From: Stylophora pistillata
Taxonomy: Eukaryota
NCBI RefSeq assembly: GCF_002571385.2
Contig: NW_019218008.1
Location: forward strand, 299,131-363,130
DNA: 64,000 bases
Reading direction: 5' to 3'
The notes beneath the pieces were generated by a model that had not been told where the DNA came from, made no database searches, and saw only the letters and a list, made by a program, of their open reading frames with translations. The position numbers and the translations under genes were made by a program. Of the stretch, positions 11,106 to 41,100 are shown in pieces. Numbering within the stretch: position 1 is the stretch's first letter; every line of letters begins with the position of its first letter.

Positions 11106-11330
11106 TTAACAATTATTATACGAACGCGTGTTGGATATGAGGTGATAGAAAGCCAATTAGGCGCGTAGCGCCGAGTTGGCTGTAATCATTTCATATCCAA
11201 TAAGCGCGAGTGGGATAATTGTTTTATTAAAAACGTTAAATTTAATTAAATTTTATTCAATTTTTAGCTCCTTTTAATTTTAAGCTGACACGTACGCTTG
11301 CCATATTTATAGATTATGGTATATTGGCTG

Positions 11331-11385
<55 letters not shown>

Positions 11386-11400
11386 TAGTTTTTAATAATG
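11106..11400 (+). mobile_element. Hairpin-headed non-autonomous element (second copy inverted at ~37992-38290)
   Basis: ~118-nt imperfect palindrome (aacaattatt...ataattgtt, centre ggcgc-gta-gcgcc) plus a ~175-nt body. The reverse complement matches 37992-38290. Confidence 0.75.
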
Positions 11401-11787
11401 ATAATTATAAAACAGATTGAAAAACCTGGGTCATAAAAGGTATAGTAATATTCCCATGTTTATTTCCGTTTTGGACAACATTCCAGATAAAGTAAATTCA
11501 ACAACGGTCAGAGAAGTTTCATAGTTGTAACACCTGCTAGTATAATATGACAGCCACCATACAATGATGCGACCATACTCGCGTGGTGGCATTAACTTAG
11601 GATATGAATTGGAAGAAACCTAAAAACATTGCTCAGAAAAAAAAAACGTTTGATGCTTTGTCCTACCTAAGAAAAGCGAAAATCAAATCACTGTAAGCTG
11701 GCAGGTTTCGCAAGATTCTATCGTGCCTCGTTCGGAAGTCTCCTTAATATAATATTCTTGGCGTATCGGGTAATTCGTGTGCACACC

Positions 11788-12420
11788 NNNNNNNNNNNNN
11801 NNNNNNNNNNNNNNNNNNNNNNNNNNNNNNNNNNNNNNNNNNNNNNNNNNNNNNNNNNNNNNNNNNNNNNNNNNNNNNNNNNNNNNNNNNNNNNNNNNNN
11901 NNNNNNNNNNNNNNNNNNNNNNNNNNNNNNNNNNNNNNNNNNNNNNNNNNNNNNNNNNNNNNNNNNNNNNNNNNNNNNNNNNNNNNNNNNNNNNNNNNNN
12001 NNNNNNNNNNNNNNNNNNNNNNNNNNNNNNNNNNNNNNNNNNNNNNNNNNNNNNNNNNNNNNNNNNNNNNNNNNNNNNNNNNNNNNNNNNNNNNNNNNNN
12101 NNNNNNNNNNNNNNNNNNNNNNNNNNNNNNNNNNNNNNNNNNNNNNNNNNNNNNNNNNNNNNNNNNNNNNNNNNNNNNNNNNNNNNNNNNNNNNNNNNNN
12201 NNNNNNNNNNNNNNNNNNNNNNNNNNNNNNNNNNNNNNNNNNNNNNNNNNNNNNNNNNNNNNNNNNNNNNNNNNNNNNNNNNNNNNNNNNNNNNNNNNNN
12301 NNNNNNNNNNNNNNNNNNNNNNNNNNNNNNNNNNNNNNNNNNNNNNNNNNNNNNNNNNNNNNNNNNNNNNNNNNNNNNNNNNNNNNNNNNNNNNNNNNNN
12401 NNNNNNNNNNNNNNNNNNNN
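11788..12420. other. Assembly gap (N run)
   Basis: Run of n. Confidence 1.
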
Positions 12421-12816
12421 GTTTGTTTCTAGTATTGGAATCAAGCCTATTTTTAAACAGACACGATGTCACAAGTATTAGGAAAATAGCTTTAAATTGC
12501 GAAACTCAAAATTACGCTCGCGGCTTGACAATTATTACATCCCTTTGTGGACACTAATGTCCCATTTTGAGCACCAGTGTACGATTTTAGACACAAGCTG
12601 GCTAAAAACATGCTGATCACAATTTTGTTGAAAGTTGAGAAATTATGCCAGTACAATCTGAAGGGGTTTATCCTCCCCCGGAAATAAAAAATTTCCAACG
12701 GGATATAACCTTTCTGTTTCTCTGAATTCGCGAAAATCATGTAATTAATAAACCATTGTTATGTACCATCGTCTTAAGTTTCTTCTCATCTCTCTCTTCA
12801 TCCTTTGGGGCCACAG

Positions 12817-14289
12817 GTAACCAGGCTATTCGTTCCGCCGAGTCCGCAAATGGAGGAAATTCATCGTCACGTGCCACAGACCACCCAGCCACAAGTTACT
12901 TTCCACGACCATCATCTAGTGCCACAGGTTTCCAAGCTACAGGCTCCCTTCACAAAATTAGTTTCCACGGTCTATTAGGAATAGTATTCACTCCATTATC
13001 ATCTGTCACTTTTGTTCAGGAAACTGCGTCTTCACTGAAATTAACAAAATCATCAAATCATATTGGCTTTCAAACGGCTGCGAATTTCTCTGTATTTTTT
13101 GAGCGGTCGAGTCCAACATCCGGTATTATAGATCTTTCCTCAGGTTCCTTAGTATCAGCGCAGACGTCATGCTCACCGTCAAGTGCCAGAGGTGTTCAGA
13201 CAACCAGCAACTCGATAGGTTCAGGTAAATTATTTCTCATTTTTTTAAAAGATTTGAAATGTTTGATGAGTTTCTTTAATTTAATAACCACCCCCATGCT
13301 CTTTCCATCTCATTTTCTATTTTCACGTCTCTTTGTCTTACTAATCCTAATCTGACCCATTCCCTCACGCCTTTTTTGTCTGATCACATGATGCACCTTG
13401 TCTTCTTATTATTCCCCTCTTGATCGAAAGCTTTCTGTTACCTATGAGACAGAAACTCACTGCCTGCAAGGAGATTGGACACTAGTCCATAGTATTATGG
13501 TATGTAGAGAGAAACCACGAGGAGAGAGACATCAAAAGGTTGAGTTGAGTTCATGTGTGCTCGTCGCTTCCCTACAATAACACTGCCAAAACATATAAGG
13601 TTTGTTTTTTATTTCCCTTGCTTGTTTTTAATGAAAGCTTTTACACATTCTATATTTATAGTGCAAATACCTGGTGCTGTCTCTGGGTTTACTCCGGGAG
13701 AACCATCGACAGTAGGTAATCATACAATAACGTACGGATATGTTGTGCGACAGAATATGCTCTGAGTTTACTCCATTGTATCTTTTACGGACCGTTCAAC
13801 ATCTTTAGGTGAACCGTTGCCTCTTCTGGCTAAGATACTCATTCCTGTGGTTGGAGTCCTGTTCGTTGTGGTAGTTGGTGTCGCTTGGTGTTGCTGTGTA
13901 CGAGGAAAGGAAAGAGAAAACTTCGAAAACCCCACCGAATCAACACAGATGGTAAGTAACCACTCTGAAACTGGTTGTGCGTTCTTTGGCTGGATACATG
14001 ACTAGCATAAAACTCTCTTTATTTAAAACATAAAACTCTCTTTATTTAAAACATAAAACTCTCTTTATTTAAAGGAGATCTTTAAAAAAGCACAGGCGAA
14101 GCCTCTGTCTCTTGAAGGCGCTAAAGTTAAAGCACTGCGCTTAAAACGAGAAAAAAATGCTTTTAGTCAAGGAACTGTCCCTATCTTCCCTTATCTTCTG
14201 TTGTTTAAGCTTAATATGTGATTTGCTTTGTCGACACGTTTTGTTAGGTACGACTTGATGGGACCGAAAATCGTGGAGGGTCCTGTTAA
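12817..14289 (+). CDS. 3' exons of a Ser/Thr-rich (mucin-like stalk) type I membrane protein with a short tail; 5' end not resolved
   Basis: Phase-compatible GT-AG exons: 12817-13224 (S/T-rich), 13662-13715, 13809-13951 (TM ILIPVVGVLFVVVVGVAW followed by CCCVRGK) and 14248-14289 (VRLDGTENRGGSC*). Confidence 0.65.
14006..14073. repeat. 23-bp tandem repeat x3 in an intron
   Basis: cataaaactctctttatttaaaa x3. Confidence 0.9.
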
Positions 14290-14571
14290 CTCCATGCGGT
14301 GTTATTCCTGTGTCAATTGCAACTCTAACAGGTTTTTAAACGAAAAGATAAACAAGAACGACACACAAGACGGGAATGAGTCTTTACATTAACAAGTCAT
14401 GTCTCACTAACCACTACATCGAGATTAAACATTTTAAAGCAAGAAGTGCAGAACATTAAAATCTAAGAGCATGTATTGCAATTTTGTAATCTGACCATTG
14501 ATCAACCCATAGGAAGTCTTAGAACTGTTGCACTCAGACTCTGATATCTGAGGGACAACAAACCATTATAA

Positions 14572-14673
14572 GCATTCAGCTGTCACGTGACTTTCGGAAG
14601 GAACTCAACTGTATGACCTCCGACTGTAGGTGACTATCACGTGACTTAAAGCGTGACATGAAAACGAGTCTGA
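14572..14673 (-). pseudogene. Duplicated 3' end of the neighbouring GPCR
   Basis: About 90% identical to 15048-15147 (last ~32 codons and the stop). Confidence 0.8.
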
Positions 14674-15049
14674 TAAGGGACCACTCATTACTCATCGCTT
14701 TGGGNACAGAAAATTGACTGCCCACGAGGGGAATCATTAGAATACTTCAGAACCGGGGAAGGTGGGTCAGAAAAAATTAATTATGAGATAACCAAAGATC
14801 CTGTTCCCCCCTCCTGCTGGCGATAAATGATGTCTGGTCCCTCAAAATTTTCAACAAATTTCTATGTGTCAGGTGAACATAAATGTTCATTGTAACACCT
14901 GGATATCATTTCTAGTATGTTTGAAACACTTAATGTAATCAGAAAATTCCCTGGCAGGATTGTATTAATAAATAACAAAATGTCAATTTTATTGTTGTTG
15001 TTCATTCACGAAAGATGATGCTCCGAGGAAGTTAGCATTTCACTCGTCA

Positions 15050-16015
15050 TTAGCTGTCACGTGACCTTCCGAAGGAACTCAAATGTATGACTTCCGGCTG
15101 AAGGTGACTATCACGTGACTTAAAGCGTGACATGAAAACGAGTCTGAACGCCCGCCGGATGTGGGCAAGCCTGAAGTTGAATATCAGAGGGTTGGCGGTA
15201 GGGTTTAAGTAGAGAAACGGGAGGAAAAATCTTACACCGGCGAAAAACCAATCCTGCCCTCTGCATTCTGGTAAATAGAGATCCAATAGTTTAAAGATGA
15301 GATAAGGAAGCAGAGATGTCACAAAACAAAACACTATCAGTTGTGTGGTGACTGCCAAAGCCCTCTCTCTCTTTCTCCGTCTTAATTCAACGCCGGTGGA
15401 GTTTAATGACCGTTCAGAATCTTCTAAAAGACATTCTGCTTTCCTGTTGTGCAGTCGCACCACTATAATAAGCGCTATATTGAATGCAATCAAAGCCAAA
15501 AAGGGTGCAGTGGCAGTCAAGTGAAAGCGTGAAGGTGCACTCATCTATTTTGACCCCGCTAAACTTAATAAGCTGAAGGTCAGGGAATAAACCACCACGG
15601 ATACCACAGCAATGACACCTCTCCTCACCGTGGGCTTTTGCCGATAGACGATTGGGAAAGCTACAGCAAAGAGCCTCTCACAGGACAGCAGCAGTGCTAA
15701 CATATTTGCTGTACAAATTGTAAACCCGGCGAAAACTGCCGCGAATATTGTACCTTCAAGTGAGGAGGTGTTCTCTTTTCCAAGTACGCATAAAATGGAA
15801 TTGTAGACAACATCAATTCCTGTTATACTTCCGCTCAAAATGTCTATCAGCGCCAGAACGGCTTTGCAGACCACTATAGGCTTCCTGAAGCATCTTAAGG
15901 GATCTTTGTACAGAACAACAAGGAGTAAACCATTAGCGACGGATGCCACAATGAAAAACACAACGAGAAAAATCAACCCCGTTGTACAGATTGCTACTCT
16001 AAAATCGCTTCCCAT
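15050..16015 (-). pseudogene. Intronless class A (rhodopsin-like) GPCR with a single in-frame TAG
   Basis: ORFs 16015-15545 (TM1-4; ANGLL, LALID, SCERLFAV) and 15544-15050 (TM5-7; LLPY, NPLIF) are contiguous and in frame across AAA-TAG-ATG. Confidence 0.8.
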
Positions 16016-16665
16016 TTCCTAGTAAACCAACAACGAACTTCGTCAGCAAGTTCTCAATGTCGTCTGCTCCGCGCACCACCAAATTAAGAACAACAAAAAA
16101 AATGAACGCTAGCACCGGTGTTTACACCAAGAGACTTCCCCTGAAAGTTTTGATTTTTATTATTAATCTTATTATTAATCTTTTAATCCCTAAGAGTGAC
16201 TGGTATCTAAATTCTCCTTACAATATTAGCCCCGAATCGAGCATTGAGGTCAGGAGAATGAAAGTAAATGATCACCAACCAGAAAAGCTTTTGATTGTTA
16301 AACAAATTCTCTTTGTTAGCTCTTCAGCACTTTAGGAATAGTATACAGAACAGTATTGAGAATTCGTATACTGATGTTAGGGTGCACAATCATCCCTAAG
16401 CATTTTAGTTAAAAATATTCTTAATTGAAGTCCCCGTGGATGTTCTTGAGCTAAAAACCCATTTCTATTTCAAACAGTGTTGATATTTCGTCCTAATCAC
16501 ACTGATAATCAATACATACACGATGGCCTTCAAATGAGGTTTTCATCTCTCGATGAAAGATATACTTTTTCCCAGTGTGAAATATCGGTCTACATGAATG
16601 CTCCATGATCGGCTGAGTGTGTCAGCAGACGAAGACCATCTAATAATGCTGTGAGAACCAAGAAC

Positions 16666-16885
16666 AATAGTCCATTTTACAGTTGTGTGCTTGGTTGCCA
16701 GGCCTTTTAACGGGAGTGAGGCTAGGGGTGACCTTGTTATGATACAGACCTCACTGTCTTTCAAATGTAAATCACTTTGTTATCATGCTAACTAAATACA
16801 GGTCTCTATCACGACAAGGTCACCTTCAGCCTCACCCCAAATCAAAGGCTTGGCAACTAAGTACACAACTGTAAAATGGCCTATT
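16666..16885. mobile_element. MITE (long TIRs)
   Basis: aatagtccattttacagttgtgtgctt...aagtacacaactgtaaaatggcctatt; the arms pair over ~80 bp. Confidence 0.85.
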
Positions 16886-17759
16886 AACATTTCTTTCCTA
16901 ATGCTTATCTTTTGTTTCCTTGAAATTCACTAATTCCATTAACACTTAACGAAACGATTTTACACTTGAACCCAAGCAATTAGATACTCCTTAAAAGGTT
17001 TGAAAAGAAATTGTGTAAATCATGTCTTAAACAGCGCTATCCCATGGATTTTGGTGAAAGATTGTTTTGTTGTTTCAGTTGAAGAGCAATATCAGGCTCG
17101 TTTGTTTGATTGCTTCACCTTAACAAATAAATTTTTGGTTAACCTAAATTGATGATTCTGTTGCTGTAGAATTCAAATTTTCGTTCAGCTGGAGATTGGG
17201 ATGGTAATTTTCTAGTTGGGAAATAACGGTGATGATAAAATAACCATTTTTTTAAAAAACGTTCTTAAGAAAGATATCAGCCGCTTTAAGTTACTTGCTC
17301 CGTACAGTAACGATGATTGGAATTCCATGTCGTATCAACAAAAAGCCACTGAGTTATACAGCTGTCATACACCTTAACTCAACAGTTTAAGATTGATTCC
17401 TTAAAACCCGTAGACCAGGTAAACAACTTTAACTTTCTTGACAATAAAGGCCTGTTTGTTGAGCTTATTTCATGATGAATTTGGGAGAAATAGATGATGG
17501 ATATCTTATCGCTAGTTGTACGAATAAATGAACTAACCTGAGTGTGTAGAGAACAGTAGTTGACACTCCCTTCGAACCACACCGACAAGCAGGTACATAC
17601 TCGCATATTCACACAATCACGCTTTCAGGGGAACGTTAAAAAGGGACTGGTGGAAAGTGGAGAAAGCATACACCCCCCTCCGGGCTTCTCTTATGAGCAG
17701 CCGCATATTAGATTTACAGGAATGTCACAACATCTATTTTTACCACAGCTGGCGTAATG

Positions 17760-18050
17760 TGATTGGACAATTTGCCCTAGTCGATAAACGGTACAGACAA
17801 CGCTACTCGCGTCAACGTGTCACGATCTTGGTCACGCATTAAAAAAAAGTTTTATTCGACGTCGATTTTCTGGTAAGAAACAAATCGATAGTAGTTAGCG
17901 TGGTCTTTACTCTTATCGACAACAGTATTCGTCATCGCAGTGGTCGAAGTTTATTGCGGACTTACTCGGCTGCGGCTCGTGAGTCCACATCCTTTTAACC
18001 ACTTTGATGACGAATGTTATTGCCGGTAAGAATACAGACCACGCTACCAC
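17760..18050 (-). mobile_element. Hairpin-containing interspersed repeat
   Basis: Imperfect palindrome ~17910-18030 centred on ggacttactcggctgcggctcgtgagtcc. Confidence 0.6.
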
Positions 18051-19197
18051 TGTCGCTTTGTTAAATTTCAAGCATTCAGGGGAACGCAGAAAAGGACTGG
18101 AGAGAAGTTTTTGCGGAGACAAAGAAAAAAATTAGAAACATTTAAAGAATATCAACAACGGAACGTCGAGGAAGACGTCGATTACAGAATGAATTCATGT
18201 TTTTGGTTACATTTTCGCAAATGGTTGGATGCGTTTAATGTCTCCTACGGAGCCACACCTGAACTTCAGCATAGCATATGCGAGAAGCGTCGAGCTGCAC
18301 ATGGAAACATAAATAATTTACCGTCTAGGTTTCCGTCAATAGTCCACGCAAATTCTGGTACTTTCACGTTGTTTTTTTGGGGAGGACATCTGAGAAATGT
18401 ACGAAGTCTTAAAACGCACGTGCTAAGCTGTTGCTTTGCTCATTACATCTTTTTGTTTTGCCATGTCCTCGTTTCCGTCGCCGTCATGGTCTGCCAAAGT
18501 TTCCTATGGTCACATATTCGAGAAGAAATAACTTTTCAATTTTTCCTTCAAATCGAATATGAGCCACATTATGATTGGCTTACATGTTAGATGTGCATTC
18601 ATTGAGATATGTGGAACACGGGAGGTTTGGAAAACATGACGGATGCTTAAGAAGTCCTCTAGGCGGAGCAGGGAGTGTCTATAGCTTCGAAACGGCTCGT
18701 CAAATGCCCAAGTGCTTCTCGATGAAAGCAAAGTGTACAGAATAAATAACATATTTTGTAATATTTTCAAAGCGGTAGCCTGAATGTTTTAAAAGAGAAA
18801 ATTCTCACTGCCACGCCTCTGAATGCACACGCCCACGTCACCAGCTTGCACCTGGTTTTGAGTCATTGAGACACGCCCGTGAAATTGATTTACTGAAACA
18901 CAATTTTTCTTGATTTGCAATTTAAAGAAAGAGAGTTTGAGCCATGGGTTCTTTTATTTTTGTAAAATGTTCTTTTTGTAAGGAGTGGTTCATCAGTAGC
19001 TATGAACCACACCTTAAAGCAAAGTCCCCAGATCGGTCCATCAAAATAATCCTTTTTAAATTTTTTTTTACCAGCTATTAGTATAAAGAATTCAGTCAAT
19101 TTACCAGAGTCAACTGCAGATTTAGCGGGTCATCAGCAATATAGCTGTTTGTTTCGTTGAAATGGGCTTATTTCAATTCTCAGACATGCAAAATTCG

Positions 19198-19780
19198 TAT
19201 AGGTAATCACATGATTTCGAGTGCAACTTCGAATAAATAAGCACGAGTAAGTTTTTTCAAAGACTAACAAAATTGCATGAACCCGTAGGGCGAATGCAAT
19301 TTGTAAAAGAAATTTTACAAGTGCTTATTTATTTCAAATTTCACGAGAAAAATCATGTGATTATGTATTCATAATATACGTGAAAAAATACGAGGTAGCT
19401 TATCACAATTATGTAAAAGAAAAGCGCGCGCATCACGTGCAAAAATAATTAATTTAAACCCTGCAAGTGACATTGTGAGTTAGGTCAAAACCACCGCGTA
19501 CGATCAAAACAATAAGATAAAATGAAATTTTCACATCTTAAAGGCGCGAAAAAGTTCAAAGTCCGGCCAAACTGTTCAAGGAATTGTTCAGTGAGTTTTG
19601 GTACTTCTGTGAGTTTCTTTCATTACTGACCAACCAGAATGTCTGGTTTGTTATTTTCTTTGCACTGAATTAACCCTCTTCTGCGCTGAATTAACTCTCT
19701 TCTACGCTAAATTGCCTGAAAACTGCATATATCTTAACCAATCAGAACTAAGTAATTTTTTCACTTATTTCATTAGTTGA
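19198..19780 (+). mobile_element. Hairpin-headed non-autonomous element
   Basis: ~160-nt palindrome 19204-19364 (taatcacatgattt...aaatcatgtgatta) centred on ccc-gta-ggg. The right boundary is approximate. Confidence 0.6.
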
Positions 19781-20945
19781 TAAATTATATAGTAATCGAT
19801 AACACGATCCTCTTCCCAAAGTTAGAACACGAAATCCTATTTTTAGTCTTGATATATTCATCTTTATTTTAAATTGTAAGATTTGGTGAGTGAAATATGT
19901 TCGGCCATATGGTATTCAACATAGTCGATGGTTTGGTTTGGTTTGGTTCAGTGACTTTAGCACCTGCTTGATTGGCATTTCAACAGAGCAGACTGGTTTC
20001 GTTGAAAAAATATTAATTACTTCCTATGATGTCAAAATTCAAAGGGGATTTTAAGGAATCAGAAACAATCTTTGTCGATTTTTGGATTTAATAGACGAGG
20101 GAAAACTTTCACACAGCTGTCTTCATGAGCAAAAACATATGATAATGAATAAAGCTGAGAAATTTGTGACGATCTAACTAGAAAATATTAATTTTGTGAT
20201 GGATTCATATAAATTGGGAAATTATGCCATCGCGGTGGGACGCTAGATACTCTGTTTAATTCATTATGTACGAAACAGAATAACAGAAACGACTCGATCA
20301 GTTCATTCTATGTCCCTCCGGCAGCAATTGGGGACTGATCCTTTGAAAAGACCAAAAGTTGTTTACATTGTGTATTCATAATCAAGTTTTATGCTGGAAT
20401 AAGAGAGCTTCGCGATGCAATTGGTTATGTAAACTTTTTCAGTGTCAAATAGCATGTACGCGATGGGCCTCAGAGGGATTTTTGCATAAATCTACAACAA
20501 TGTCAACGGATAACTACTTTATATTGAACTTTGTTAGCGTAAGTACGCCATTTGATTCATTCTGATCACAATATTTAGTACATTTAGTTGCATTTTACCT
20601 GACATAATCATGTTGCTGTAATAAACTTCTGGATTGTTAAAGCACTACACGGAAGGTCTTTCATCAAACTTTTCTTTTTGCATTCAGTGGTTAAAGAAAA
20701 CACGCGCTCGAATATTTTTTGGGCGCTTTAACCGCGGTTAACTTTGGTGCCGTAGCTCTACGAGAGTTCTGCAGTTTACTAAATAATCTACGCAACTTGA
20801 GTCAAGGACTTGAGCAAAATTCAAATCCATCTCCTCACTTCAGTTATGTTAATTTTCTCTTTCTTGGAAAATTCTCTTTTAAGTCCAAACGCCTCTTAAA
20901 AAGTCTAAAGCGTTGAGTATAGTTTCTGAATTTAAAACGCAGGTG

Positions 20946-26900: not shown

Positions 26901-28622
26901 AAAATGATAATGACATCGACAACAGCATATGGTACCGCTTTGTTAGTCCAGCCACAGCGACCCCAGTGCAGGTCTGCTTTATATTTACAATTATTGTGAG
27001 GGGAGGTCTTGAAGTTTAAACTTTCAAGGGAGAGTTTTGATCGGGTGGGGCATAAAATTACAAAATCTATGCTGCTAAAGGGGGAAATATCGCATGACTT
27101 GAATGGGTATTGCGAACTGCTCTAGACTAGTTCCCTAGCAGACTAAAGAAAGAGCTAATTTACGAATTACCCATATTTTGAATATGTGAATTTTTTCACC
27201 AGTTACCTGACTCCTGTACAGAACCTCGGACTTGTGGAACCCAGGCTTCAGGTTGGCTTCGCGGAGGTCACCCATCTGCGGAGGAAGGCCTTGTAAACCG
27301 GACTGTTTGCTTTAGTTGGAATGACAACTGCTGCTTCGCCGAAGTTCCGGCGCAAGTCAAGCATTGCTATGGATACTATGTGTATAAGCTGCAGCCGACA
27401 GCTTTGGAAGTGAAAGCAAGATATTGCGTAGGTGAGAAATCCATCAGTTGGGTTTAAAATAGTTATAGGCCACTCCAGACTTAGAAGAGAGAGAGTTGGT
27501 CGTATTTCAAGAATTCTTACAGCATAGTAATTCTCTTGTGCCATTAAAACAAATCTTAGTAACTGTGACCAAAACTGATTTTTTTCTGACTTCCAATTGA
27601 TTGATAAATAGAAATTAGAACTTGAGAGAACACTGCATAAAACGACTTTCTCAGAAAATAAAAATGACATCAGTGACACCCTCAGCTGCGCCTCATGAGC
27701 TACTTTTTTATATTTACCACAATTTTAGTGTCACTAGTGATTTATTACTGAAGAGATACGGATTCGATTGGTTAAATCAGGAGCCCATTACCTGGAGCTT
27801 CAATCTTCCATACTGACCCTCTGAGCCAACCCTGTCCCCTATCTTTCTATTTTTAGAAGCACCTCCCACGGCGGTTTTCGCGGGTGTTTTTATGATAGCC
27901 AATCATAAGAGAGCTGTCGTCCTATTGTGTTACGTCTCTATTGTGTTACTTGCAGGTCGCACAAAATTATTTCAATAATGACGGAAAGCGCGGAAAGTTT
28001 AAGGATAAGAACCCCCGCAGATATCTCATCTCTAAAAATAAAAAGATACGGGACAGGGTTGATTCAAGGGTATGTAACGTTTAATAAACCTCCTTTAATA
28101 CAATTAGCCGCGGCGACACTACCTCAACACAACAAGATGGCCGACCAGATTTTCCCGCTCTTCTTCCTCCAAGTCCTGGGGTGAGAGGAGCCTCGTTTCC
28201 TAGCAACGTTACAGGAACAACTGAGATGGAAGCTCTGGGTAATGGGCTCCTGGTTAAATAGACACAAGGTGCCATATTTAATTAATCTCTGTGATGTTAT
28301 TTTCACCCATATCAAAGAAAACCAAGACATCCATCATGAAGATGCTTTGTTTCACCTCCTCGTGTCAAAAACCGGTGTACAGTTAGCATTGACAGGTCAC
28401 GTGATTCACACGGAGTATCACGTGACCTCTTCATGGAAGTGTATGGCCTATTGCCTTATAGAGGTGACGTGTGTCTCATTCAACTACTACCCCCAGAGCA
28501 ACACATGTGAGCTTAACAACAGCACTGTATCAAGTAACCCGGAAAGTTTGAGAGAGGGACCTGGGACCGAATATTACGAGAGGATGAACTTAATAAGTCT
28601 AGAAGCTGGCTCACATCTATAA
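20946..28622 (+). CDS. Secreted mosaic protein: signal peptide - FTP/fucolectin x2 - Ig-like - D8C (UMOD/GP2/OIT3-like) - PAN/apple
   Basis: Nine phase-compatible GT-AG exons: 20946-21000, 21744-21953, 22327-22512, 24320-24559, 25184-25369, 25935-26201, 26814-26971, 27203-27431, 28318-28622. Motifs: DLALRQPA/NLALGKSASQS, DPWWRVDLG, GRYVNIR, LTLCEVEVY (FTP); LVCPEPFGYPEPLVAWVKDG...CVASNKHG (Ig); WYRF...CGTQASGWLRGGHP...RTVCFSW..NCC...YYVYKL...RYC (D8C); CMAYC...CVSFNY...CELN (PAN). Confidence 0.88.
22575..23535. repeat. Intronic 88-bp purine-rich minisatellite (~10-11 units)
   Basis: Unit gctatgtatagagaaagagagggaggaaggaaggatggtagggatgtaagctgatgggtaagaaggaagagagacaggctgatcggta starts at 22663, 22751, 22931, 23018, 23106, 23194, 23322, 23410 and 23498. 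Confidence 0.95.
23780..23945. mobile_element. MITE, TA-flanked
   Basis: tatacaccgaatgcaaatatggcgtccaatttgaattgccattgttctgg...ccagaacaatggcaattcaaattggacgccatatttgcattcggtgtata; ~60-bp TIRs. Confidence 0.9.
26445..26772 (+). mobile_element. Second tRNA-derived SINE family (fragments also at ~21230-21380 and ~48190-48250, minus)
   Basis: tRNA-like head (taatggtcagtgcactggactcc...ggctcgagacc), core cacccagaagtatgtatggg and a tttacc-like tail. Confidence 0.65.
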
Positions 28623-28859
28623 GAATCGAATCAATGGTAAAATCTCCCAGACAGTAAGAGTGTAAGTTTTCCTGCGCGGAACAATTTGACATAGTAGAAT
28701 AGTATTTATTGTTAAAGCTGTGATCGAAATAGACTCATTTTTAGCAAAGCATTGGACGTCACATCAACGCAACATTTCACACTAGTTCAAGGAATTGTTT
28801 TTCATTTTCTAATTCAGGGTTTCAGTTTGAAAATTTAGAGACAGGGTAAGAGATACAAT

Positions 28860-31774: not shown

Positions 31775-31958
31775 AGGATAATTTGGTTTTATCAACTGAG
31801 TTGATGTAAATTGGCCCCTGAAAAGAGTTTGAAAAGCTTTCTATTTGCGGTGGCCGATTTATATTATTAACTCAGCCGATAAAACCAAATTATCTTGTAG
31901 ATACCCCCACCGATGTAGCACTACAGTTTCTTTAGAAACTTACCCCATTTATTCATTT
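31775..31958 (+). mobile_element. Decayed Penelope-like terminal repeat fragment
   Basis: Similar to 3595-3705 (gcggtggccgattt...ccaccgatgtagcactacagtttctttagaaacttacccc). Confidence 0.55.
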
Positions 31959-32487
31959 TTAGTTTTAACACCTTTATAAGCCATAAGCTGTAAGGAGCAA
32001 CAAACCAGCGCTAAAATGTCCTCTATGAACTTACAATTTGACGAGCGTAGTGCAAATTGTTACTTTTAATTTGCGATACAAAGGGGACATACGCGAGCGT
32101 TAAATGAAATACTCGTGTGTGAAACGCTACTCTCGAGCGTGACGTTAGATACTCGTAACATTCGAGCTCAAAGGAGCGAGATACACGAGTGCAGTATCAT
32201 GAAGAGCGGCTTTCATGTCAACATATCTTGCGGTATCAAAATGCAGGACTCTCACAACACTAGATTGAAGTGGCACGACGATATGATAGCTTTGACACCC
32301 AGACTGTATGATAAGAATTACTAGGGATCTAAAGGTAAAAGGTAAAGTATTCAGGGCAGGTGGCATACGCTCGCTCTTAACCGGCTAAATTTCTAAGAGC
32401 ACGTTTAGTCGACAAGGATGAGAGGGGGTTGGTGAGAGGCTTATTAAGTCAAGGTGGGGCATGGAGCTCATTTGAAAAAGGTAGTAT

Positions 32488-33250
32488 TTAACAATTATTC
32501 GCCGAAGGCGAGGTGAATATCGTCGAATAATCCCCGAGACGAAGTCGAGGGGATTATTCGAAAATATACACCGAACCTGAGGCGAATAATTGTTTTAGTA
32601 TAATTTCCGAGCTGAACAACAGAGATATTTCTAAAATTATAACATTTTAGTAACATTTATTAACATTTTATTTTAACATTTTATATAAACCGCGTGGAGC
32701 GGTTCATATAGCGTCATATAAGGAACCGTTCGACCAATCAATTAAGATATTTGCCTTTACTTAAGCTCCCCTTCCTTTCCTATTCACGTGTTCATTTGGT
32801 ATATACTATACACCTCCTGGAGCAAGCAAACTGAAACAAGATCGCGCGTCAAGGGTTTTAAATTTCCAACCATTTTCAATACTTATAGAAATAAACTCAT
32901 GTTTATTAAAAATTATTCGCCTCAGGTTCGGTGAATATCGTCGGATTTTTCGACAATATTCACCGAACCTGAGGCGAATAATTGTTTTAGTATAATTTCC
33001 GAGCTGAACAACAGAGATATTTCTAAAATCATAACATTTTAGTAACATTTATTAACATTTTATTTTAACATTTTATATAAACCGCGTGGAGCGGTTCATA
33101 TAGCGTCATATAAGGAACCGTTCGACCAATCAGATTGCTGGAAACTCTTTGCTCAGCTCTGAAATTATACAAATTGCTATTACGAATTTTATTAACCGGA
33201 AAAGCGATGTCAGCCTTTAGATTGGAAATGTTTAAAATATCGGGAAAAAA
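32488..33250 (+). mobile_element. Hairpin-headed element with an internal tandem duplication of its head (32570-32741 = ~32961-33132); may extend to ~34340
   Basis: ~108-nt palindrome 32489-32596 centred on gac-gaa-gtc. A rebuilt palindrome sits at 32910-32986, followed by a near-identical body. Confidence 0.7.
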
Positions 33251-34365
33251 TTGGGTTGCACAGCAGGAGAGTGATCCAATCTCTGTCACAGGTGCATGCA
33301 ACAAAGTTCCACGCCGTTTTTTGCGATCGATCGTTGAGTGCAGCGATTGAAAAGTTTTGATTAGCACTTTTTTCTGTTTTCTAATTTTAAAACTATAACA
33401 AAGTAAATGGCTGTGATTGATATGGCCAGGAGAGACTAAAAGATGCTCCTCGAAAAAAAATGCAAAAAAATCAACAGGAATTGGTGGCTTACTAGTTAAA
33501 GCTTTGAGGTTGGGGCCGAGTTTTTTACACGTGATTCTTTGATTATGTATGCCGTGACACTTCATTAGATTCACGGATAGAACTTCGTTGTATTGTTGTT
33601 TCAGTTTACGATCCATAGATTGATTGATTGTGAGATTGATCGTGATTTTCATCGTTGAGTGTGGTTCGTGGTCAATTGCCTTTCAAGAATAAAGATTTGC
33701 GCAAACAGTCGACTTTGGTTTGTTATCTCGATCTCTAAAATAGTCCCCAAACACCTTGTTAACCGCGTTTTGGAGCGACGCCCCCTTGAACTTGAGCATT
33801 TAGATTTTTGGTGGCCGCAAACGTTACAGCCGGTGTTGCTGTCAATTTGTGCCTGGTTTCTTAAAAATGGTTTATGCCTCTTGCTCGCTTGCCAATAACC
33901 AAGTGTTGTACACTGTGCATTGCGAGGGTTGAGCTCGGTTTGCTGGGAGAATTAAACGGACAACCTTTATCAAAATACGATTTATGTCTTAACTTCCGAG
34001 CTAAGGTAAAGCGATCGCAGAGATAACTCGTGGGTAGCTTGTATTATCCTGAATCAAGTCGCCCAATCTGAGCTAAGGTAATTAAAATGGAGGCGGTGCT
34101 GCGAATGTTTTCCAGATCGTACTGGATTGTTTTATCCACTCTACGCCGCCCTGTCCGAGAAATACTACTAAAAAACAGACACACAAGTCTAAGTGAAGCC
34201 TTCCAAGTGATGTTTGGATCGCTACTCCTGCAATCTAAGTACTAACGAAAGACTAATCTTAGACGTCTACACGTGGTTTTCGCCCGCCGCCACGTGATTA
34301 GTTTGCATGATCTGTTGTAGCGATTAACTGTACTAACTATGGCTAAAATCAAGTAAATACAGTCT

Positions 34366-34760
34366 ACCACCGCCTCCCGGTTAGCTCAATTGGTAGAGCG
34401 CCGGACTATTGTGCGGGAGGTCGTGAGTTCAAATCCGGCCGGACCAACACTCAGGCTCTTTGAATAACCGAGAAGAAAGTGCTGCCTTTGTAATAATATC
34501 TGCAAATGGTTAGACTTTCTAGTCTTCTCGGATAGGGACGATAAATGGAGGTGCCGTCTCACAAACCCTTGTGTGTGATAAAAAAATTTGTGGGACGTTA
34601 AAGAATCCACACAGTGTTCGAAAAGAGTAGGGCACGTAGTGCCCGGTGTTGTGGTCTATCTTTGTGTAGTGTCTATCAAATTGATGGGGGGTACTGCGCC
34701 TTTGAATATTGTATAGAAAGGGCCCAATATAAATAAGGAATTCCTTCATTCATTCATTCA
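34366..34760 (+). mobile_element. Near full-length tRNA-derived SINE
   Basis: A box tagctcaattgg, B box gttcaaatcc, body shared with 100-292 and 1235-1510, and a (ttca)n tail. Confidence 0.85.
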
Positions 34761-35767
34761 CTTAACTGAACGTGAAATGGACACCTCTCTTGAAATCCTT
34801 CTGAAATGGGATAAGGAGGATTCCTTCTAAGAGCCATTCAGTTTTCAGTAACATATTTGCCCTGCACTGAAGCTTAACTAAAAGCGGCCCGAAATCACAT
34901 GTTCACAAGTATCTGCCATTGTAAGTCCCGGATGTAACCTATCTGGGATAATGATAAAACGCTGTGCAAGCTGCATAAAATAATATACTCCCTTTGGAAA
35001 TAAATGTCATTTCAAGAATGTTATCAAATCCGTATTGATTCCCTGGCAAGTCGAAAGTAGCAGCTTTTAGTCGATTTCATGAATTTTGACAGTTTTCCCT
35101 TCATAACAACGACTGAAATTGCAAATTAGAGTAGGTGGCTCTCACTTAATTCAATTTTTGCTTCTTGAGCCTTTATCTGTTTTGAAAATTTAAAAACGCC
35201 CTCTTCAAACTGTCATCATCGGTTTTGTGAGATTAATGTAATTGGGTGACCGTTAAGACTCTATAACAGGAAAGTGCACAACTTGATCTCAAATATAAAT
35301 TATAGAAAACAAATGCACGCTTTGCCATAATTCCCCTACAATCAATTAACCTGGAGGTGATAATGAATTGATATGTAGATTAACAAGACTTGAAAAAAAT
35401 AAATGATGTCATTTGAAAAATTCCTGACAAGTTGCAAATTGACAAATTTCACTTGGTTTGTTCAAGTTTATTGAAATATCACTATTTAAGCTGTCACTCA
35501 TTACCAATATTTGCCAACCTCCACTTTTCAGTGCTGCTATCCTCTGATGCCCACAAAGGTTAGGTTTAACAAAAACAAAAATAAAGAACAAAAAGTGGGC
35601 AGCTGACATTTTATGAAGGATATCGGCTTTGATACGTGATAATCATGATAAAGTCGTTAATGCATCAAATCCAGAATTTTGCAATCTTCCGTTGGCGATC
35701 GTGAATTATATTCGATGCTTCTTCATCCTGCGACTCCAGAACGGAAAGAGAGGATCTGAAAAACGTC

Positions 35768-36769
35768 ATGAAGGAATCACACTCTCTCGAGCTCGCATCA
35801 AGGTCCGAAATCTCAATTTGGACCGAGACAGTTTTGTTTGCCATAATTAACGTTTTGGTTTTCTTTGGCAACCTTCTTACTTGCTACATCGTGTACAGAA
35901 ACCACAGGCTCCGCACAATTCCCAACATGTTCGTGATAGCATTGGCTGTAAGTGATATTCTGATTTCCATCTGCTGTATGCCATTTACAGTTGTAACTCT
36001 TTTCTACGGTCAGTGGATCTTTGGTGAAACTTTTTGTCGAGTTAATGGTTTCGAGGTGTTCACGTTTGCAGTGGCTTCAATTTATTGCATGGGAGTCATT
36101 GCAATCAGCCGATATTTCTGCGTTGTAAAACCAGAAAGGTACTTGGTGTTGTTTAGGAAGGAGAAAATTTCTTTTTACATTGCTTTTGCGTGGTTGGCAG
36201 CTCTCGTTGGATCTGTACCTCCCATTTTCTTTGAGAAAGGCGGATTTGAATTCAAGCCGGGAAAAGGGATGTGTTTGTACACATTCGAAAGCGACATTGG
36301 TTATACATTGTTTGTCGGATTTGTTTGTATCACAGCCCCCTTAACACTTATAACCATCAGCTATGTAATGGTGTTCCGCGCAGTTTCAAGATCAAATCGA
36401 GTTTTCTCGGAAGAAAGCGATTTTCCTCGTTTACGAGCGAATATTGAGGAAGCCAAAGTGAGCAAGACTTTAGTTGCAGTTCTAGTTGGTTTTGTGTCTT
36501 GTTGGATGCCAATTTATGTCATCGACACCACTGATGCCTTGCGCGGGAACAACGCTTTCCCGCGAGAAGTGTACATTTCTTACGCGTTCTTGCTTTACTT
36601 GAGTAGCACCATAAACCCGGTTATTTACGGCGTCATGAATAAGGAATTGAGGCGAGAATACAAGGATATCTTTAGCAAGATTCTTCGTTGCCAGCACCAT
36701 AATATTATAGAGACTGAGACTAATCCTGAAGTAAGGTTTACCGCTCGACTGGAAGGCAGGTCTACTTGA
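35768..36769 (+). CDS. Intact intronless class A GPCR, melatonin-receptor-like cnidarian family (333 aa)
   Basis: Seven hydrophobic segments; GN (TM1), LAVSD (TM2), SRY in place of DRY, CWMP (TM6), NPVIY (TM7). Confidence 0.92.
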   Translation: MKESHSLELASRSEISIWTETVLFAIINVLVFFGNLLTCYIVYRNHRLRTIPNMFVIALAVSDILISICCMPFTVVTLFYGQWIFGETFCRVNGFEVFTFAVASIYCMGVIAISRYFCVVKPERYLVLFRKEKISFYIAFAWLAALVGSVPPIFFEKGGFEFKPGKGMCLYTFESDIGYTLFVGFVCITAPLTLITISYVMVFRAVSRSNRVFSEESDFPRLRANIEEAKVSKTLVAVLVGFVSCWMPIYVIDTTDALRGNNAFPREVYISYAFLLYLSSTINPVIYGVMNKELRREYKDIFSKILRCQHHNIIETETNPEVRFTARLEGRST

Positions 36770-37627
36770 ATATTCAGAAGAAGAGAAAAAGCAAGTCATA
36801 TGCGAGAGGCAATGCCTTGCAATGTCTCAGTTTTTGATCGGCTTTAAGAATAAACTAAGTGCAGATATCATTTTGAAATTTTTTTGTATCGTTCCTAAGC
36901 AACGTACGACCGACATTCTATTCACTGGTGAGATCAAAAGTGGCCCGCCATGATGAAGTATTTACTGAAGCTCAATAACACTCTTAAAAATCTTCACCAC
37001 CTGATAGCTTGCAGCTTACGTGTTCCCCATCTGGATTTACCGAACCATTCAGGGCTTTGATTAATCGCTTTTTATCTGTAGTAGGAAAGATGAATAGCTA
37101 AGCTCTTATTCAAAAATCTCTTGGATATTTTTGATGTAAAACAACCCGGAATATAACTGTCTATATGATTAGCGCGCGTTAAAACAGGTGACACTTTTTT
37201 GGAGTGTTTATTGATTCTTGGAAATTTACATCAAAGGAGCCACATTTAAAATTGTGTTTCTTAGAAGTGCATGTTGTAATAAATAGAGTAAGATTTGATG
37301 ACTATTTCAAATACTTATCGAGTGTTTCAAAACTCTATTATCATTCAAAACTGGGAAGACTTGGGCTGCGAAGGCAGTTAGTTTTCTTTCAAGTAAAAGT
37401 GTTTTGTAAGTTTGTAGGAACGTTTAGAGAGTAACAGGCTTCCAAAAATATTTTCTTTACGTCAAAATAACGCCGGCTATTTTCAAAACTACTTCCCTCT
37501 GATATTTGATTGAATAGAATAGAGTCATGAATGGAGGTAGTGGAGGAATAGGTCACCTTCGGAAGCATACAATTTGGACACCGATAGAAAAATCAATTTG
37601 GAAAGAGGGTTAATTTTCTTCAGAGTA

Positions 37628-37993
37628 CTACAATGAACTCTTTGCCGTGTCTAGTTTCTTGTGTTCTTCTTCAGTTATAAATTCTGGACCGATGATGATG
37701 TATTCCGGTGTCCCTTCCCCGCCGTCAATAACTGGTTCACGTACAGGTGGATTTCCAATATCTGAGAAAACAAACACATGAAATTTGAAACTTTTGTACC
37801 TTCATATCTTAGCATCCTTGCCTCAGTTTCAAAAGCCAAGTTAGAATTTCTGGCATACCCGCGTGGATGTTACTGTGAACTCCTGCAAGTTTTACGGTAT
37901 TCCCCTGGGGGTTTTAGAGGAGACCATGTGCATCAGTTTTAAGCCTCAACCCCACAGGGACTTACACCCTATATACCCGGTGGATATTTTACA

Positions 37994-38082
<89 letters not shown>

Positions 38083-38155
38083 AAAATATGGCAAGCGTAC
38101 AAGTCAGGTTAAAATTAAAAGGGAGCTAAAAAATTTAAGATTTTTCTAATATCTG

Positions 38156-38186
<31 letters not shown>

Positions 38187-41100
38187 TTGCGCTTGTTGGA
38201 TATGAGATGATTATAGCCAACGAGGCGAGTAGCGCCTCGTTGGCTATCTACCATCTCATATCCAACGCGCGCTTTTGGAATAATTGTTACTTATACACAA
38301 GTGTCTTTCAGCTTCCAGTGAACACCATGTTGATGGATATTCAAAGTTGAAAAGTGTAAGCCCCCCCCAAAAAAACGTCAACAAAAACGGTAATGTTCAC
38401 AAGCAATTAGTGCGTGTGCATAGAACTTACGATAATTACAAAGGAAGACCCTCTTTTTAAACCTGAGGGTTTCTCGAGCAGTAAGTTTAGAATGAACTAA
38501 AGAAAGCGAGATTTTCACCATATAGTCAGATAAGTGAGTTGAAATAAAACAAAGGAAGTAAGGAACTTTTGATAAAAGTAAACTTTTTCTAGACCGTACT
38601 TTCCCTATAATTCTTGCACAAGTTATCGTTCACGTACCAAGATGTCTCCTTAGAAAAGCCCAGATAGCTTGTCTGTTAAGTTTCACTGCAGTAGTTGGAT
38701 CAAGTTTACTACCGAGTGAAGTCCAATACAGCATGTATGGTGGTAAAACTGACGGTATGTCACATTGGTTCATATGTCTTGTCCACCTGATGAAGAAAAA
38801 CACGTGGAAACTTTTTTGCCACCATTTTTGGTAAATGAAAGTTCCTTTAGCATGGACTGTTGGAGCCAAACTGGCAGCAAGGGAATAAGTTTAAAGTCAA
38901 ACCGGAAAACTATGGATAAGGCTTTTTATGGACAACTTCACTTCACAGAGGTCAGTGGCTGCAAAAGAAAAAAATTATTCCGCAGAAGATCATTTATAAA
39001 ATAGTAAAAAGACAAGTTCTCACCTAATCGCTATGATTGACCGTGTTTCTGCAAAGAACAAAATTCAAAAACCTCATTTTTAAGCCATTTCGTTAAAAAA
39101 TGGACCAGTTTTCAGTTGATCATCGAAAGTAATGCGAGATTGTAACGGTTTTGCTTTACTTTGCACTGTGATTGGTTCAGGAACTCATGCCATCCTCTCA
39201 ACCAATCAGATCTAAAACTTAACCGAATAGCGACTTTGTCATTTGCGTTTCCGGCGCTTTGCACAGTTTACTCGTTTTCACTTTGTGTTCCCATTGGCTC
39301 CTTGTGACATTTCCTTCGCTCTGATTGATTGTTGTGATTTCTTTGGTTTTGGTTTGATGAAACTCAATAGAAACGTGCTGTGACTTTTGAATAAAAGTTT
39401 GCTCTTAAGCTAAGAAATAGGGAATTCATAAAGAGGAGTAAGAAAAAAAAAAGAAAAAAAAAATGTAGGAAAGCAAACCTGGCTTATCATTAATTAACTT
39501 TTTAAGAGGATCCATGTTTTGGTCCCAGCGATGAAATTGCTGTGAATTGACAAACAGTAATGGCTGATCAAGATTATAGTTATATATCTCTTTTCCTAAT
39601 GGCAGCATCCACACATCAAGAGCCACACCACACCTAAAACATAAATAAAAGAGTTGAGAACTTAATTAAGTCAACAAAGGTACTTAGAAGAAGCTTGTAG
39701 CTAAAGGTTGAAAATAACAAATTTATTTGATGAAAAGGTGTTATTGGACACATTTATAAAGTCAGGTCCATCTAAATTTTCTCCTAAATCTGAGATGGTG
39801 AAAATGCATTCTTTTTTAAGAAGCTCTGCAACTTTTGCTAACAATGTAAGATATGAACACAGGCAAGCTTTGTTCAAATACCAATCTTAATGAAGTCCTA
39901 CTGTAACAAACAATGTAATCTTTTTTTATTTGAATCTTTCCATCTGTGAGGTACTGTTAACTAAATACATTAAAAAGAGGAGCCTGAAAAGAACTGAGTT
40001 TAACAAATTTAACTTTATCAATGTTGTGATGTGCACTGTACCTAAATCGCTTGTCCTTTGCCAAAGTCAGGACAGTAGTAGCACCTCCAAACGAATGACC
40101 AACAACTGCAAACTTTTTTAAGTCCAGTCTTCCCTTTAAAAGAAGACAAAGAAAAAAAATTTATAAATTAGCTCTATTCTAGCAGTCAAAGTGGGGAGTA
40201 ACCATTCAAATGGAAAGCTATTGATAGTATCTTTTTCTAGTGTCTGACTCTATGAGCCGTAAACGATGTTATATAAAAAAACATGAAATTTAAAATAAAC
40301 TGAATGGACTGCTCTTCACAGGAGAGGTGTCACCAAAACAAACTTCTCTGCTTATCCAAAGAACAGTGGATTATTTGCTACAACATCAAAAGCATTCTCA
40401 TTCCTTGAAATAACTAGTGCCAATAAATAGATTAGTGGATGGAAGGAAAGAAGATAAAAAGACCAGAAAAAAAAAATTCACGAACAAAGAAGCAAATTGC
40501 CTTCAATTACCTTTAGTTGTTGTAAAATAGAATTTTCCTGGAATAAATTTGTTGGAAAACGTCCAGACTGAATATTTTCAAGAATGTTATGGGCACTTAT
40601 ACATTCATTTGCTCTGATGTGAACCTGTTAGATAAAAAATACACCAAAAGTAAAAGTAAGGTTGTAATATTAAAAGAGAGAGTAAAGGTGCCTTAATGGC
40701 AGGCATTGGGAACTCAGTGAAGCGTCAACAAGAAACTTCAACAGGTCTCACTTTGAGCACAGGCTGGGTTGCTGGGCTGTATTCTTCTGCAAGAAACTTA
40801 ACTCTAAAAATGGCTCTCTGTAGCTGAGGGTAAATGAGTCTCAGGGAATTATTACAAACTAGGATAAGCTATGTCAGAATGAGCCACTAAATGGAGGTAC
40901 AAACTGTTATTGTACCTTTACTACAGTGGTATCTGAAATACAGATTAAACACACCTGCTTGTTTCGAAGTTCAGACCCATCATCATTTGCTTGGAGATGG
41001 CGGTACTGGATCCATTCCTCTGTTGTCTTTTCATCTCCTTCATTCTTCTTCAGAACATAAGTAGCAGAAGCTGATTCGTCTCTATTATTTTAAAAAAGAA

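What the first reader, a model, noticed from the sequence alone, without database searches (positions are those of the whole stretch)
11106..38290. One strand-specific DNA hairpin (stem - GA/GA - short stem - GNA triloop) shared by sequence-unrelated repeats
Seen: the centres of several dissimilar palindromic repeats have the same geometry. These are aaattgcat-GA-accc-GTA-gggc-GA-atgcaattt (19270-19302), cgaataatcccc-GA-gac-GAA-gtc-GA-ggggattattcg (32524-32560), gactcac-GA-gcc-GCA-gcc-GA-gtaagtc (minus 17959-17985) and agccaac-GA-ggcgc-GTA-gcgcc-GA-gttggct (reconstructed from 11151-11181 and 38215-38245). Decayed GA-ggc-GCA-gcc-GA versions occur near 27680 (minus), 44335 and 48755 (minus). I saw no TIRs or TSDs around them. 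Established: C-GNA-G triloops and tandem sheared G.A pairs make unusually stable DNA hairpins on one strand only, and HUH transposases (IS200/IS605, Helitron) and integron tyrosine recombinases recognise folded single strands. Inference: these repeats may be non-autonomous members of one ssDNA-based transposition system whose cis signal is a conserved fold, not a sequence.
Basis: partly seen in the sequence, partly recalled or inferred. Interest (0 to 1): 0.85.

Follow-up and report, generated by a model that had tools for sequence, protein, structure and literature searches.

The report
Strand-specific hairpin caps coral transposons
Thousands of short non-coding transposons in this coral genome end in a long DNA hairpin that carries G-A mismatches and a GNA loop on one strand only; this conserved fold is probably the single-strand signal read by a Helitron-type rolling-circle transposase, though no such enzyme has yet been tied to it.

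Summary
Family consensus sequences from genome copies show the same centre in all four window families: CGAG, a 2-5 bp GC stem, a C-GNA-G triloop, the stem's complement, then CGAG again.

Genome-wide this pattern occurs 3,866 times against 248 for the reversed control. The version with TC on the GNA strand sits at background (232 vs 218). At least 11 different Watson-Crick inner stems occur, which is covariation. Further CGAG/CGAG tandem G-A mismatches lie along the arms, always on the same strand.

The repeats are not sequence-unrelated. They share the core and one of two terminal motifs.

Each palindrome (105-190 bp) caps one end of a 300-600 bp non-coding unit. The rest of the unit is bounded by its own 11-25 bp inverted repeats and often holds tandem repeats. 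I found no target-site duplication, and head-to-tail tandems are common. This is the Helitron-2/Helentron (HLE2, HINE) layout with an unusually long, structured stem-loop.

HLE2 Rep-helicase genes exist in the genome, but none was linked to these ends.

Neither an IS200-type enzyme nor a tyrosine recombinase is supported as the mobilising enzyme.

The scan has noted this motif before, on other pieces of this genome.

The parts
11105..11416 (+). F4 unit: palindrome P 11108-11223 with decayed core at 11151-11181, followed by an IR-bounded body to about 11416
17896..18046 (-). F3 palindrome, an old copy about 80% identical to other copies; core at 17959-17985 on the minus strand
19199..19787 (+). 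F1 unit: palindrome P 19199-19368 with core at 19270-19302, followed by a body bounded by 21-nt inverted repeats, ending near 19787
27681..27695 (-). CpG-decayed F3-type core (TGAG-GC-GCA-GC-TGAG) in a degraded palindrome
32485..32743 (+). F2 unit: palindrome P 32490-32594 with an exact core at 32524-32560 and two more tandem G-A mismatch sites in the arms, followed by the start of the body
32908..33175 (+). Second F2 unit whose palindrome (32908-32986) lacks the central core, followed by a body bounded by about 25-nt inverted repeats
37993..38299 (-). F4 unit in the opposite orientation: body 37993-38172, palindrome 38173-38288; core at 38215-38245 in the fully paired variant with its loop flipped
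44300..44370 (+). Possible strongly decayed F3-like core
   Evidence: weak
48720..48790 (-). Possible decayed F3-like core (GAGA-GGC-A-GCC-GAG)
   Evidence: weak

Best explanation
The palindromes are terminal stem-loops of non-autonomous rolling-circle transposons laid out like Helitron-2/Helentron elements (HLE2, also called HINE or DINE-1-like). Each unit has a body bounded by short inverted repeats, often holding tandem repeats. A hairpin follows at one end. There is no target-site duplication.

What is unusual is the hairpin. It is 105-190 nt long. Its stem is interrupted one to three times by CGAG opposite CGAG, that is, tandem G-A/A-G mismatches in the pyrimidine-GA-purine context known to give sheared pairs. 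Its tip is a short GC stem closed by a C-GNA-G triloop.

All of these features lie on the same strand, the one that reads terminus, then hairpin, then body. Only that strand can fold into a compact, stable hairpin. The complement would carry pyrimidine-pyrimidine mismatches and a TNC loop.

Inferred mechanism: when the element is unwound, the folded GA strand marks the element end and its polarity for an HUH Rep-helicase, as a start or stop signal for strand transfer.

Shown here: the anatomy, the conservation, the covariation, the strand bias, the copy number and the lack of a long TSD. Inferred only: that the signal is read as ssDNA, and that the enzyme is an HLE2 RepHel.
For: Core pattern 3,866 vs 248 control. 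The mixed-strand version is at background, 232 vs 218. At least 11 distinct complementary inner stems occur among the first 100 hits, with loops GAA, GTA or GCA only. Extra CGAG/CGAG sites lie in the arms of F1, F2 and F4 and in families picked blind from the pattern list. The terminal motif lies 5' of the hairpin on the GA strand in F1-F4 and in three further families. The layout of palindrome plus IR-bounded body with tandem repeats was seen. It matches published HINE/HLE2 descriptions: TIRs of 11-18 nt, a stem-loop after the right repeat, central repeats and no TSD (PMC4067079, PMC7492417, PMC11417382). No TSD of 9 nt was found for F4: 5.5 vs 5.2 matches of 9 in mismatched-pair controls. 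One paralogous empty site shows no duplication. Head-to-tail tandems occur, including between different families. HLE2 markers are present in the genome: Helitron_like_N 42 hits, DUF6570 47 hits, and an intact 2,013-aa ORF ending in a Pif1 helicase.
Against: No autonomous copy with these ends was found. About 6 kb on each side of the intact HLE2 ORF on contig C174, and 6 kb downstream of a second HLE2 locus on C68 (713 of whose bases are unread N), hold no such palindrome or core. A T^T target was not demonstrated. Flanks instead show a short A/T motif and one variable nucleotide at the junction. Published HLE2 stem-loops have 5-10 bp stems, about ten times shorter. If the hairpin is at the 3' end, as in canonical HLE2, the well-folding GA strand is the complement of the conventional top strand. 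Nearest-neighbour DNA folding energies differ little between strands: -34.8 vs -34.1 and -66.2 vs -64.6 kcal/mol. The strand argument therefore rests on published oligonucleotide work recalled from memory, not on anything computed here.
Confidence: 0.5

Rival explanations
1. The elements belong to a different, undescribed single-strand-based mobile system. Its enzyme would not be a Helitron RepHel: for example a Replitron-like or other HUH Rep without a helicase, or a recombinase acting on folded strands as integron integrases do on attC. The hairpin would be its recognition module.
For: The strand-specific conserved fold. No TSD. A short conserved flank motif next to the hairpin terminus, and insertion exactly at the hairpin terminus of resident copies, as expected when target and end-cleavage site are alike. 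The HLE2 loci examined lack these ends. Variable junction nucleotides recall the fuzzy ends of Replitron-1 (PMC10288648).
Against: No candidate enzyme was found. Y1_Tnp occurs only on a bacterial-like contig. The tyrosine-recombinase ORF beside one F1 copy ends about 660 bp before that unit and has its own inverted repeats. Replitrons are not reported from animals. I did not search the genome for CRESS-type or plasmid-type Rep domains.
Confidence: 0.2
2. The units are ordinary cut-and-paste MITEs, or pairs of adjacent MITEs, of a DDE superfamily with a TA or TWA target. The palindromic shape would come from fold-back, and the GA/GNA centre would be a by-product, for example a stable mini-hairpin that seeded the fold-back.
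For: Shared 11-13 nt palindrome termini among F2, F3 and F4. A conserved TA close to both unit ends in F4. AT-rich insertion sites. Fold-back and head-to-head rearrangements occur.
Against: The two ends of the repeated unit are not inverted repeats of each other. A TA duplication would need 1 and about 7 unconserved nucleotides inside the element ends. No longer TSD exists. A by-product would not keep GA and GNA on one strand across at least 11 families with compensating stem changes.
Confidence: 0.15
3. The fold acts as RNA. The hairpin would be transcribed and serve as a small-RNA precursor or a structured RNA motif. CGAG/CGAG is also a stable sheared tandem mismatch in RNA.
For: The same motif is favourable in RNA (background knowledge). 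Several single mismatches on the GA strand of F1 are G-T, which would be wobble pairs in RNA.
Against: No Rfam family matched; there were only weak generic similarities to long miRNA-precursor hairpins, far below their thresholds. There is no A-tail or pol III promoter. F2 and F3 carry C-A mismatches on the GA strand. Expression was not tested. An RNA function would not explain why the hairpin always sits at the boundary of the mobile unit.
Confidence: 0.08
4. The elements are relics of a hairpin-ended linear replicon of the parvovirus type (rolling-hairpin replication), with flip/flop telomeres.
For: The F4 core exists in flip, flop and hybrid states. A G-A bubble in a terminal hairpin recalls the left end of minute virus of mice (from memory).
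Against: There are no viral genes. Thousands of dispersed 300-600 bp units exist, and the hairpin is at one end only. Inversion of a palindrome centre is also expected from recombination between the arms.
Confidence: 0.03

Closest known systems
Helentron/Helitron-2 non-autonomous elements (HINE, DINE-1, Cg_HINE; the HLE2 group)
   Same: Short inverted repeats bound the body. A stem-loop lies beyond one repeat at the element end. Tandem repeats lie in the middle. There is no target-site duplication, copy number is high, and head-to-tail arrays occur.
   Different: The stem-loop is 105-190 nt rather than a 5-10 bp stem. It carries invariant CGAG/CGAG mismatches and a GNA triloop that I have not found described for HLE2. 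A T^T target was not shown. No RepHel partner was identified.
Canonical Helitron (HLE1) 3' hairpin
   Same: A structural cis-signal near one end whose fold, not its sequence, is conserved.
   Different: There are no 5' TC or 3' CTRR ends, no clear A^T target, a far longer hairpin, and inverted repeats are present.
IS200/IS605 ends and REP/RAYT hairpins (bacteria)
   Same: Imperfect hairpins read on one strand by an HUH enzyme. A short conserved motif lies next to the hairpin. No TSD. Insertion occurs beside a fixed short sequence.
   Different: The hairpin is at one end only. No eukaryotic Y1 transposase was found; the single hit is on a bacterial-like contig.
Integron attC sites
   Same: Sequence-diverse sites share a folded single-strand structure, and unpaired features fix which strand is used.
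   Different: attC uses extrahelical bases and a tyrosine recombinase. No such enzyme was linked here.
d(GCGAAGC)-type mini-hairpins and sheared tandem G-A pairs in Y-GA-R context (biophysics, from memory)
   Same: The core is built from exactly these two elements, in their most favourable sequence contexts.
   Different: Those are oligonucleotide observations. Here the elements are embedded in a mobile-element terminus and conserved across families.

Membership tests
HLE2 (Helentron/Helitron-2) non-autonomous element | Short inverted repeats (about 11-18 nt) at or near both ends of the body | tested here: met
   F4 11-12 nt, F2 about 20-25 nt, F1 21 nt. F1 and F2 are somewhat longer than the published range.
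HLE2 (Helentron/Helitron-2) non-autonomous element | Stem-loop beyond one inverted repeat at the element end | tested here: met
   The palindrome abuts the inner inverted repeat in F1-F4, but it is about ten times longer than described.
HLE2 (Helentron/Helitron-2) non-autonomous element | Insertion between T and T without target-site duplication | tested here: inconclusive
   No 9-nt TSD. One paralogous empty site shows no duplication. Flanks are A/T-rich with a variable junction nucleotide and are not clearly T^T. No empty allele was seen in four other DNA runs.
HLE2 (Helentron/Helitron-2) non-autonomous element | An autonomous RepHel-coding partner shares the termini | tested here: not met
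   Flanks of two HLE2 loci (L081, L083, L084) hold no such palindrome or core. Only two of 40 or more loci were examined, so this is weak negative evidence.
HLE2 (Helentron/Helitron-2) non-autonomous element | HLE2-type RepHel genes present in the same genome | tested here: met
   Helitron_like_N 42 hits, DUF6570 47 hits, co-located; a 2,013-aa intact ORF.
IS200/IS605-like (Y1 HUH) element | Y1 transposase encoded by the host genome | tested here: not met
   The single locus is on a 28-kb contig with Sel1-repeat and phage-like genes, and looks bacterial.
DDE TIR MITE | Unit ends are inverted repeats of each other and flanked by a fixed-length TSD | tested here: not met
   The unit ends differ. 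No TSD.
Tyrosine-recombinase element (Crypton/DIRS) | A recombinase gene lies inside an element bounded by these hairpins | tested here: not met
   The ORF at L044:51-548 is followed by its own inverted repeat and ends about 660 bp before the F1 unit. Only one case was examined.
Known structured RNA (hammerhead, other Rfam families) | Match to a covariance model at its gathering score | tested here: not met

The most novel reading that the evidence does not exclude
The hairpin is the recognition module of a mobile system that is not Helitron-dependent. In this reading an as yet unidentified enzyme, or a domesticated single-copy one acting as RAYTs do on bacterial REPs, reads a sheared-GA/GNA DNA fold on one strand. 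It inserts units at the foot of resident hairpins.
Probability: 0.15. Interest if true: 0.85.

Novelty: new variant of a known kind. Interest (0 to 1): 0.62.

Why it matters
What the terminal hairpin of Helitron-type elements actually does is poorly understood. It is usually described only as a fold without conserved sequence. Here the fold has precise invariant non-Watson-Crick features, a clear strand polarity, thousands of copies and natural covariation. That makes it directly testable with oligonucleotides and a recombinant Rep domain. It would be a rare eukaryotic example of a transposon signal defined by single-stranded DNA structure. The motif also offers a simple genome-wide marker for annotating a large, otherwise unclassifiable repeat fraction in coral genomes.

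Tried and rejected
Strict descriptor on the window alone: one hit, too few for statistics.

Ungapped palindrome census of the sampled loci: it missed families with indels in the arms.

DNA nearest-neighbour folding of both strands: almost equal energies, so uninformative for the strand question.

Laying contigs of four other DNA runs on 32400-38399: both insertions were present and no empty allele was seen.

Search for a 9-nt TSD in F4: none.

Empty sites within the sampled loci: one usable case only.

Flanks of HLE2 Rep loci on C174 and C68: no hairpin, no core, and only chance-level inverted 12-mers.

Y1_Tnp family: bacterial-like contig only.

Phage_integrase family: one hit beside an F1 copy, which is a separate element.

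Rfam: nothing.

Literature searches for sheared G-A pairs or triloops in transposons found no description of this motif.

I redid it from files.
Full report
SETTING. The window is contig C225:299131-363130 of a 398-Mb, 5,513-contig eukaryotic assembly. Public runs that hold the stretch are labelled as coral or coral metagenome. GC content is about 38%. The assembly gap at 11788-12420 lies outside every element discussed. Nothing below depends on continuity across it, and I did not test that continuity.

THE OBSERVATION. A strict descriptor finds only 32530-32554 in the window. That descriptor requires an outer stem of 6 or more, GA, a perfect 3-5 bp stem, a 3-nt loop, and GA. The other window copies are decayed or are variants.

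I therefore fetched genome copies of each family and built consensus sequences. I call the families F1 (window 19199-19787), F2 (32485-32743 and 32908-33175), F3 (17896-18046, minus strand) and F4 (11105-11416 and 37993-38299).
- In F1, F2 and F3 the consensus centre is exactly GA, a short GC stem, GNA, the stem's complement, GA.
- In F4, the copies most like my query have a fully paired centre.
- The flanking bases are conserved as well. The motif is CGAG on both arms (TGAG on one arm of F1), and the triloop is closed by C-G.

GENOME-WIDE TEST. All counts cover both strands; the control is the same pattern read backwards.

| Pattern | Hits | Control |
|---|---|---|
| CGAG, 1-4 nt, C-GNA-G, 1-4 nt, CGAG | 3,866 | 248 |
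| CTCG on both sides of a GNA loop (mismatches on the other strand from the loop) | 232 | 218 |
| Fully paired form, CGAG ... CTCG | 529 | 154 |
| Fully paired form, CTCG ... CGAG | 654 | 214 |

The CTCG ... CGAG count is largely an unrelated repeat.

Among the first 100 hits, about 93 have complementary inner stems. These fall into at least 11 different stem sequences, with loops GAA, GTA or GCA. So the stem covaries while GA and GNA stay fixed, and loop polarity and mismatch polarity are coupled.

I then fetched eight hits chosen only for having new stem sequences. Six or seven of them sit at the centre of long palindromes of the same design.

MORE THAN THE CENTRE. Aligning the left arm against the complement of the right arm of each consensus shows further tandem mismatches of the same kind.
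- F1 has three sites, one of them CpG-decayed on one arm.
- F2 has three.
- F4 has one outer site in addition to the core.
- The blind picks show them too.
- Within a family all sites lie on one strand.

A GA-to-TC difference needs two adjacent transversions. These sites are therefore not ordinary decay of a perfect palindrome.

From memory of the biophysical literature: tandem G-A pairs in a pyrimidine-GA-purine context adopt the stable sheared form, and C-GNA-G triloops give exceptionally stable DNA mini-hairpins. The motif uses both in their best contexts. The nearest-neighbour model available here does not capture this and gives nearly equal energies for the two strands. The stability claim remains to be measured.

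ANATOMY OF THE UNITS. The palindrome (P, 105-190 nt) is never the whole repeat. In every family it sits at one end of a longer unit.

Directly beside P lies a body (B) bounded by its own inverted repeats: 21 nt in F1, about 20-25 nt in F2, 11-12 nt in F4. The body often contains tandem repeats. F1 carries a 12-nt array that runs into an assembly gap, and F2 carries four 11-13 nt units.

Palindrome termini fall into two classes. One begins GTATAGG (F1 and the L085/L091 family). The other begins TTAACAA (F2, F3, F4 and L087). In all seven families where it can be read, the terminal motif lies 5' of the hairpin on the GA strand.

Loose ends of hundreds of contigs from other individuals start exactly at 32485 and 37993. 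This confirms those unit boundaries.

INSERTION SIGNATURE.
- For 23 full-length F4 copies, the best 9-nt match between left and right flanks is no better than for mismatched pairs (5.5 vs 5.2 of 9).
- Flank logos show a short A/T motif and one unconserved nucleotide next to the hairpin terminus. At the body end there are about six unconserved nucleotides followed by TA.
- One paralogous empty site was found. An F1 unit sits exactly at the foot of another hairpin element. Three uninterrupted copies of that site show no duplication, and the junction nucleotide varies among occupied copies.
- New units often lie head-to-tail against the hairpin terminus of a resident unit, even one of another family. 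Some lie head-to-head at body ends.

CORE VARIANTS. In F4 the core occurs in four states: GA/GA with GTA, its exact inversion, and two hybrids that are fully paired. Recombination or template switching between the arms would produce these. This does not need a hairpin-primed replicon.

WHAT IT MOST LIKELY IS. The layout matches published descriptions of Helentron/Helitron-2 non-autonomous elements. Those have short inverted repeats, a stem-loop after the right repeat, central tandem repeats, no TSD and frequent tandem copies (PMC4067079, PMC7492417, PMC11417382). The last of these papers also describes a reversed form with the stem-loop at the 5' end.

The genome carries the HLE2 marker DUF6570 next to Helitron_like_N at many loci. 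One locus has an uninterrupted 2,013-aa frame ending in a Pif1-type helicase.

I therefore read the units as HLE2-type non-autonomous elements. Their terminal stem-loop has been elaborated into a long, one-strand-specific hairpin. The hairpin would be the end and polarity signal on unwound DNA.

This is an inference from layout. The flanks of two HLE2 loci showed no such hairpin. A T^T target was not shown.

RIVALS.
- A non-Helitron single-strand system remains possible. However, the only Y1 transposase gene is on a bacterial-like contig. The tyrosine-recombinase ORF beside one F1 copy belongs to a separate element with its own inverted repeats.
- Ordinary DDE MITEs are unlikely. The two unit ends are not inverted repeats of each other, and there is no TSD.
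- An RNA role is not excluded, but no Rfam family matches.

EARLIER NOTES OF THE SCAN. The same motif has been noted by first readers on at least seven other pieces of this genome. One follow-up, on another window, reached the same Helitron-2/Helentron-like reading. These notes are not independent evidence.

Noticed in passing
L082 (G000:C1546:13001-17000): A 28-kb contig holding a frameshifted IS200-type transposase, a Sel1-repeat protein and a possibly RecT-like ORF at about 35% GC. It looks like bacterial (symbiont or contaminant) DNA inside the coral assembly. No domain search was run on these ORFs.
   Followed up: partly
L044:51-870: The C-terminal part of a tyrosine recombinase (HxxR and catalytic Tyr region), followed by an inverted repeat of about 105 nt. 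A DIRS- or Crypton-like element lying about 660 bp from an F1 unit.
   Followed up: partly
L025:820-1180: Three to four tandem copies of about 100 bp, each made of host flank plus the left arm of an F4 palindrome. Each copy breaks right after the CGA of the core, suggesting breaks or template switches at the mismatch site.
   Followed up: no
L039:780-865 versus L088:300-400: The same long palindrome exists with and without the central core module of about 37 nt. Likewise window 32908-32986 is an F2 palindrome lacking its core. The core can be gained or lost as a block.
   Followed up: no
L033:1028-1640 and L025:1172-1629: F4 units joined head-to-head at their body ends, or folded back at an internal palindrome of the body. 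These give 330-460 nt super-palindromes with a hairpin at both ends.
   Followed up: partly
L060:1925-2030 and L068:2360-2560: A nested palindrome: the outer arms resemble the F1 hairpin, and the inner part is another hairpin family with its own CGAG/GCA core. F1 units are inserted exactly at the boundary between the two parts.
   Followed up: partly
G000:C174:45347-51400 (L081, L084 flanks): An uninterrupted 2,013-aa HLE2 frame (DUF6570, Rep, Pif1 helicase). About 500-bp tandem repeats and a 355-aa ORF with no Pfam match lie downstream. Its termini were not found.
   Followed up: partly
window 8527-8927 and 61092-61486: tRNA-derived repeats: a 193-nt-arm palindrome with two tRNA matches, and a further copy near 61341. 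These are unrelated to the GA hairpins.
   Followed up: no
F4 and F1 unit junctions: There is one unconserved nucleotide between the conserved flank motif and the hairpin terminus. About six unconserved nucleotides follow the body end. Both occur in copies that are otherwise 93-98% alike. This is unexplained and resembles the 'fuzzy ends' reported for Replitron-1.
   Followed up: partly
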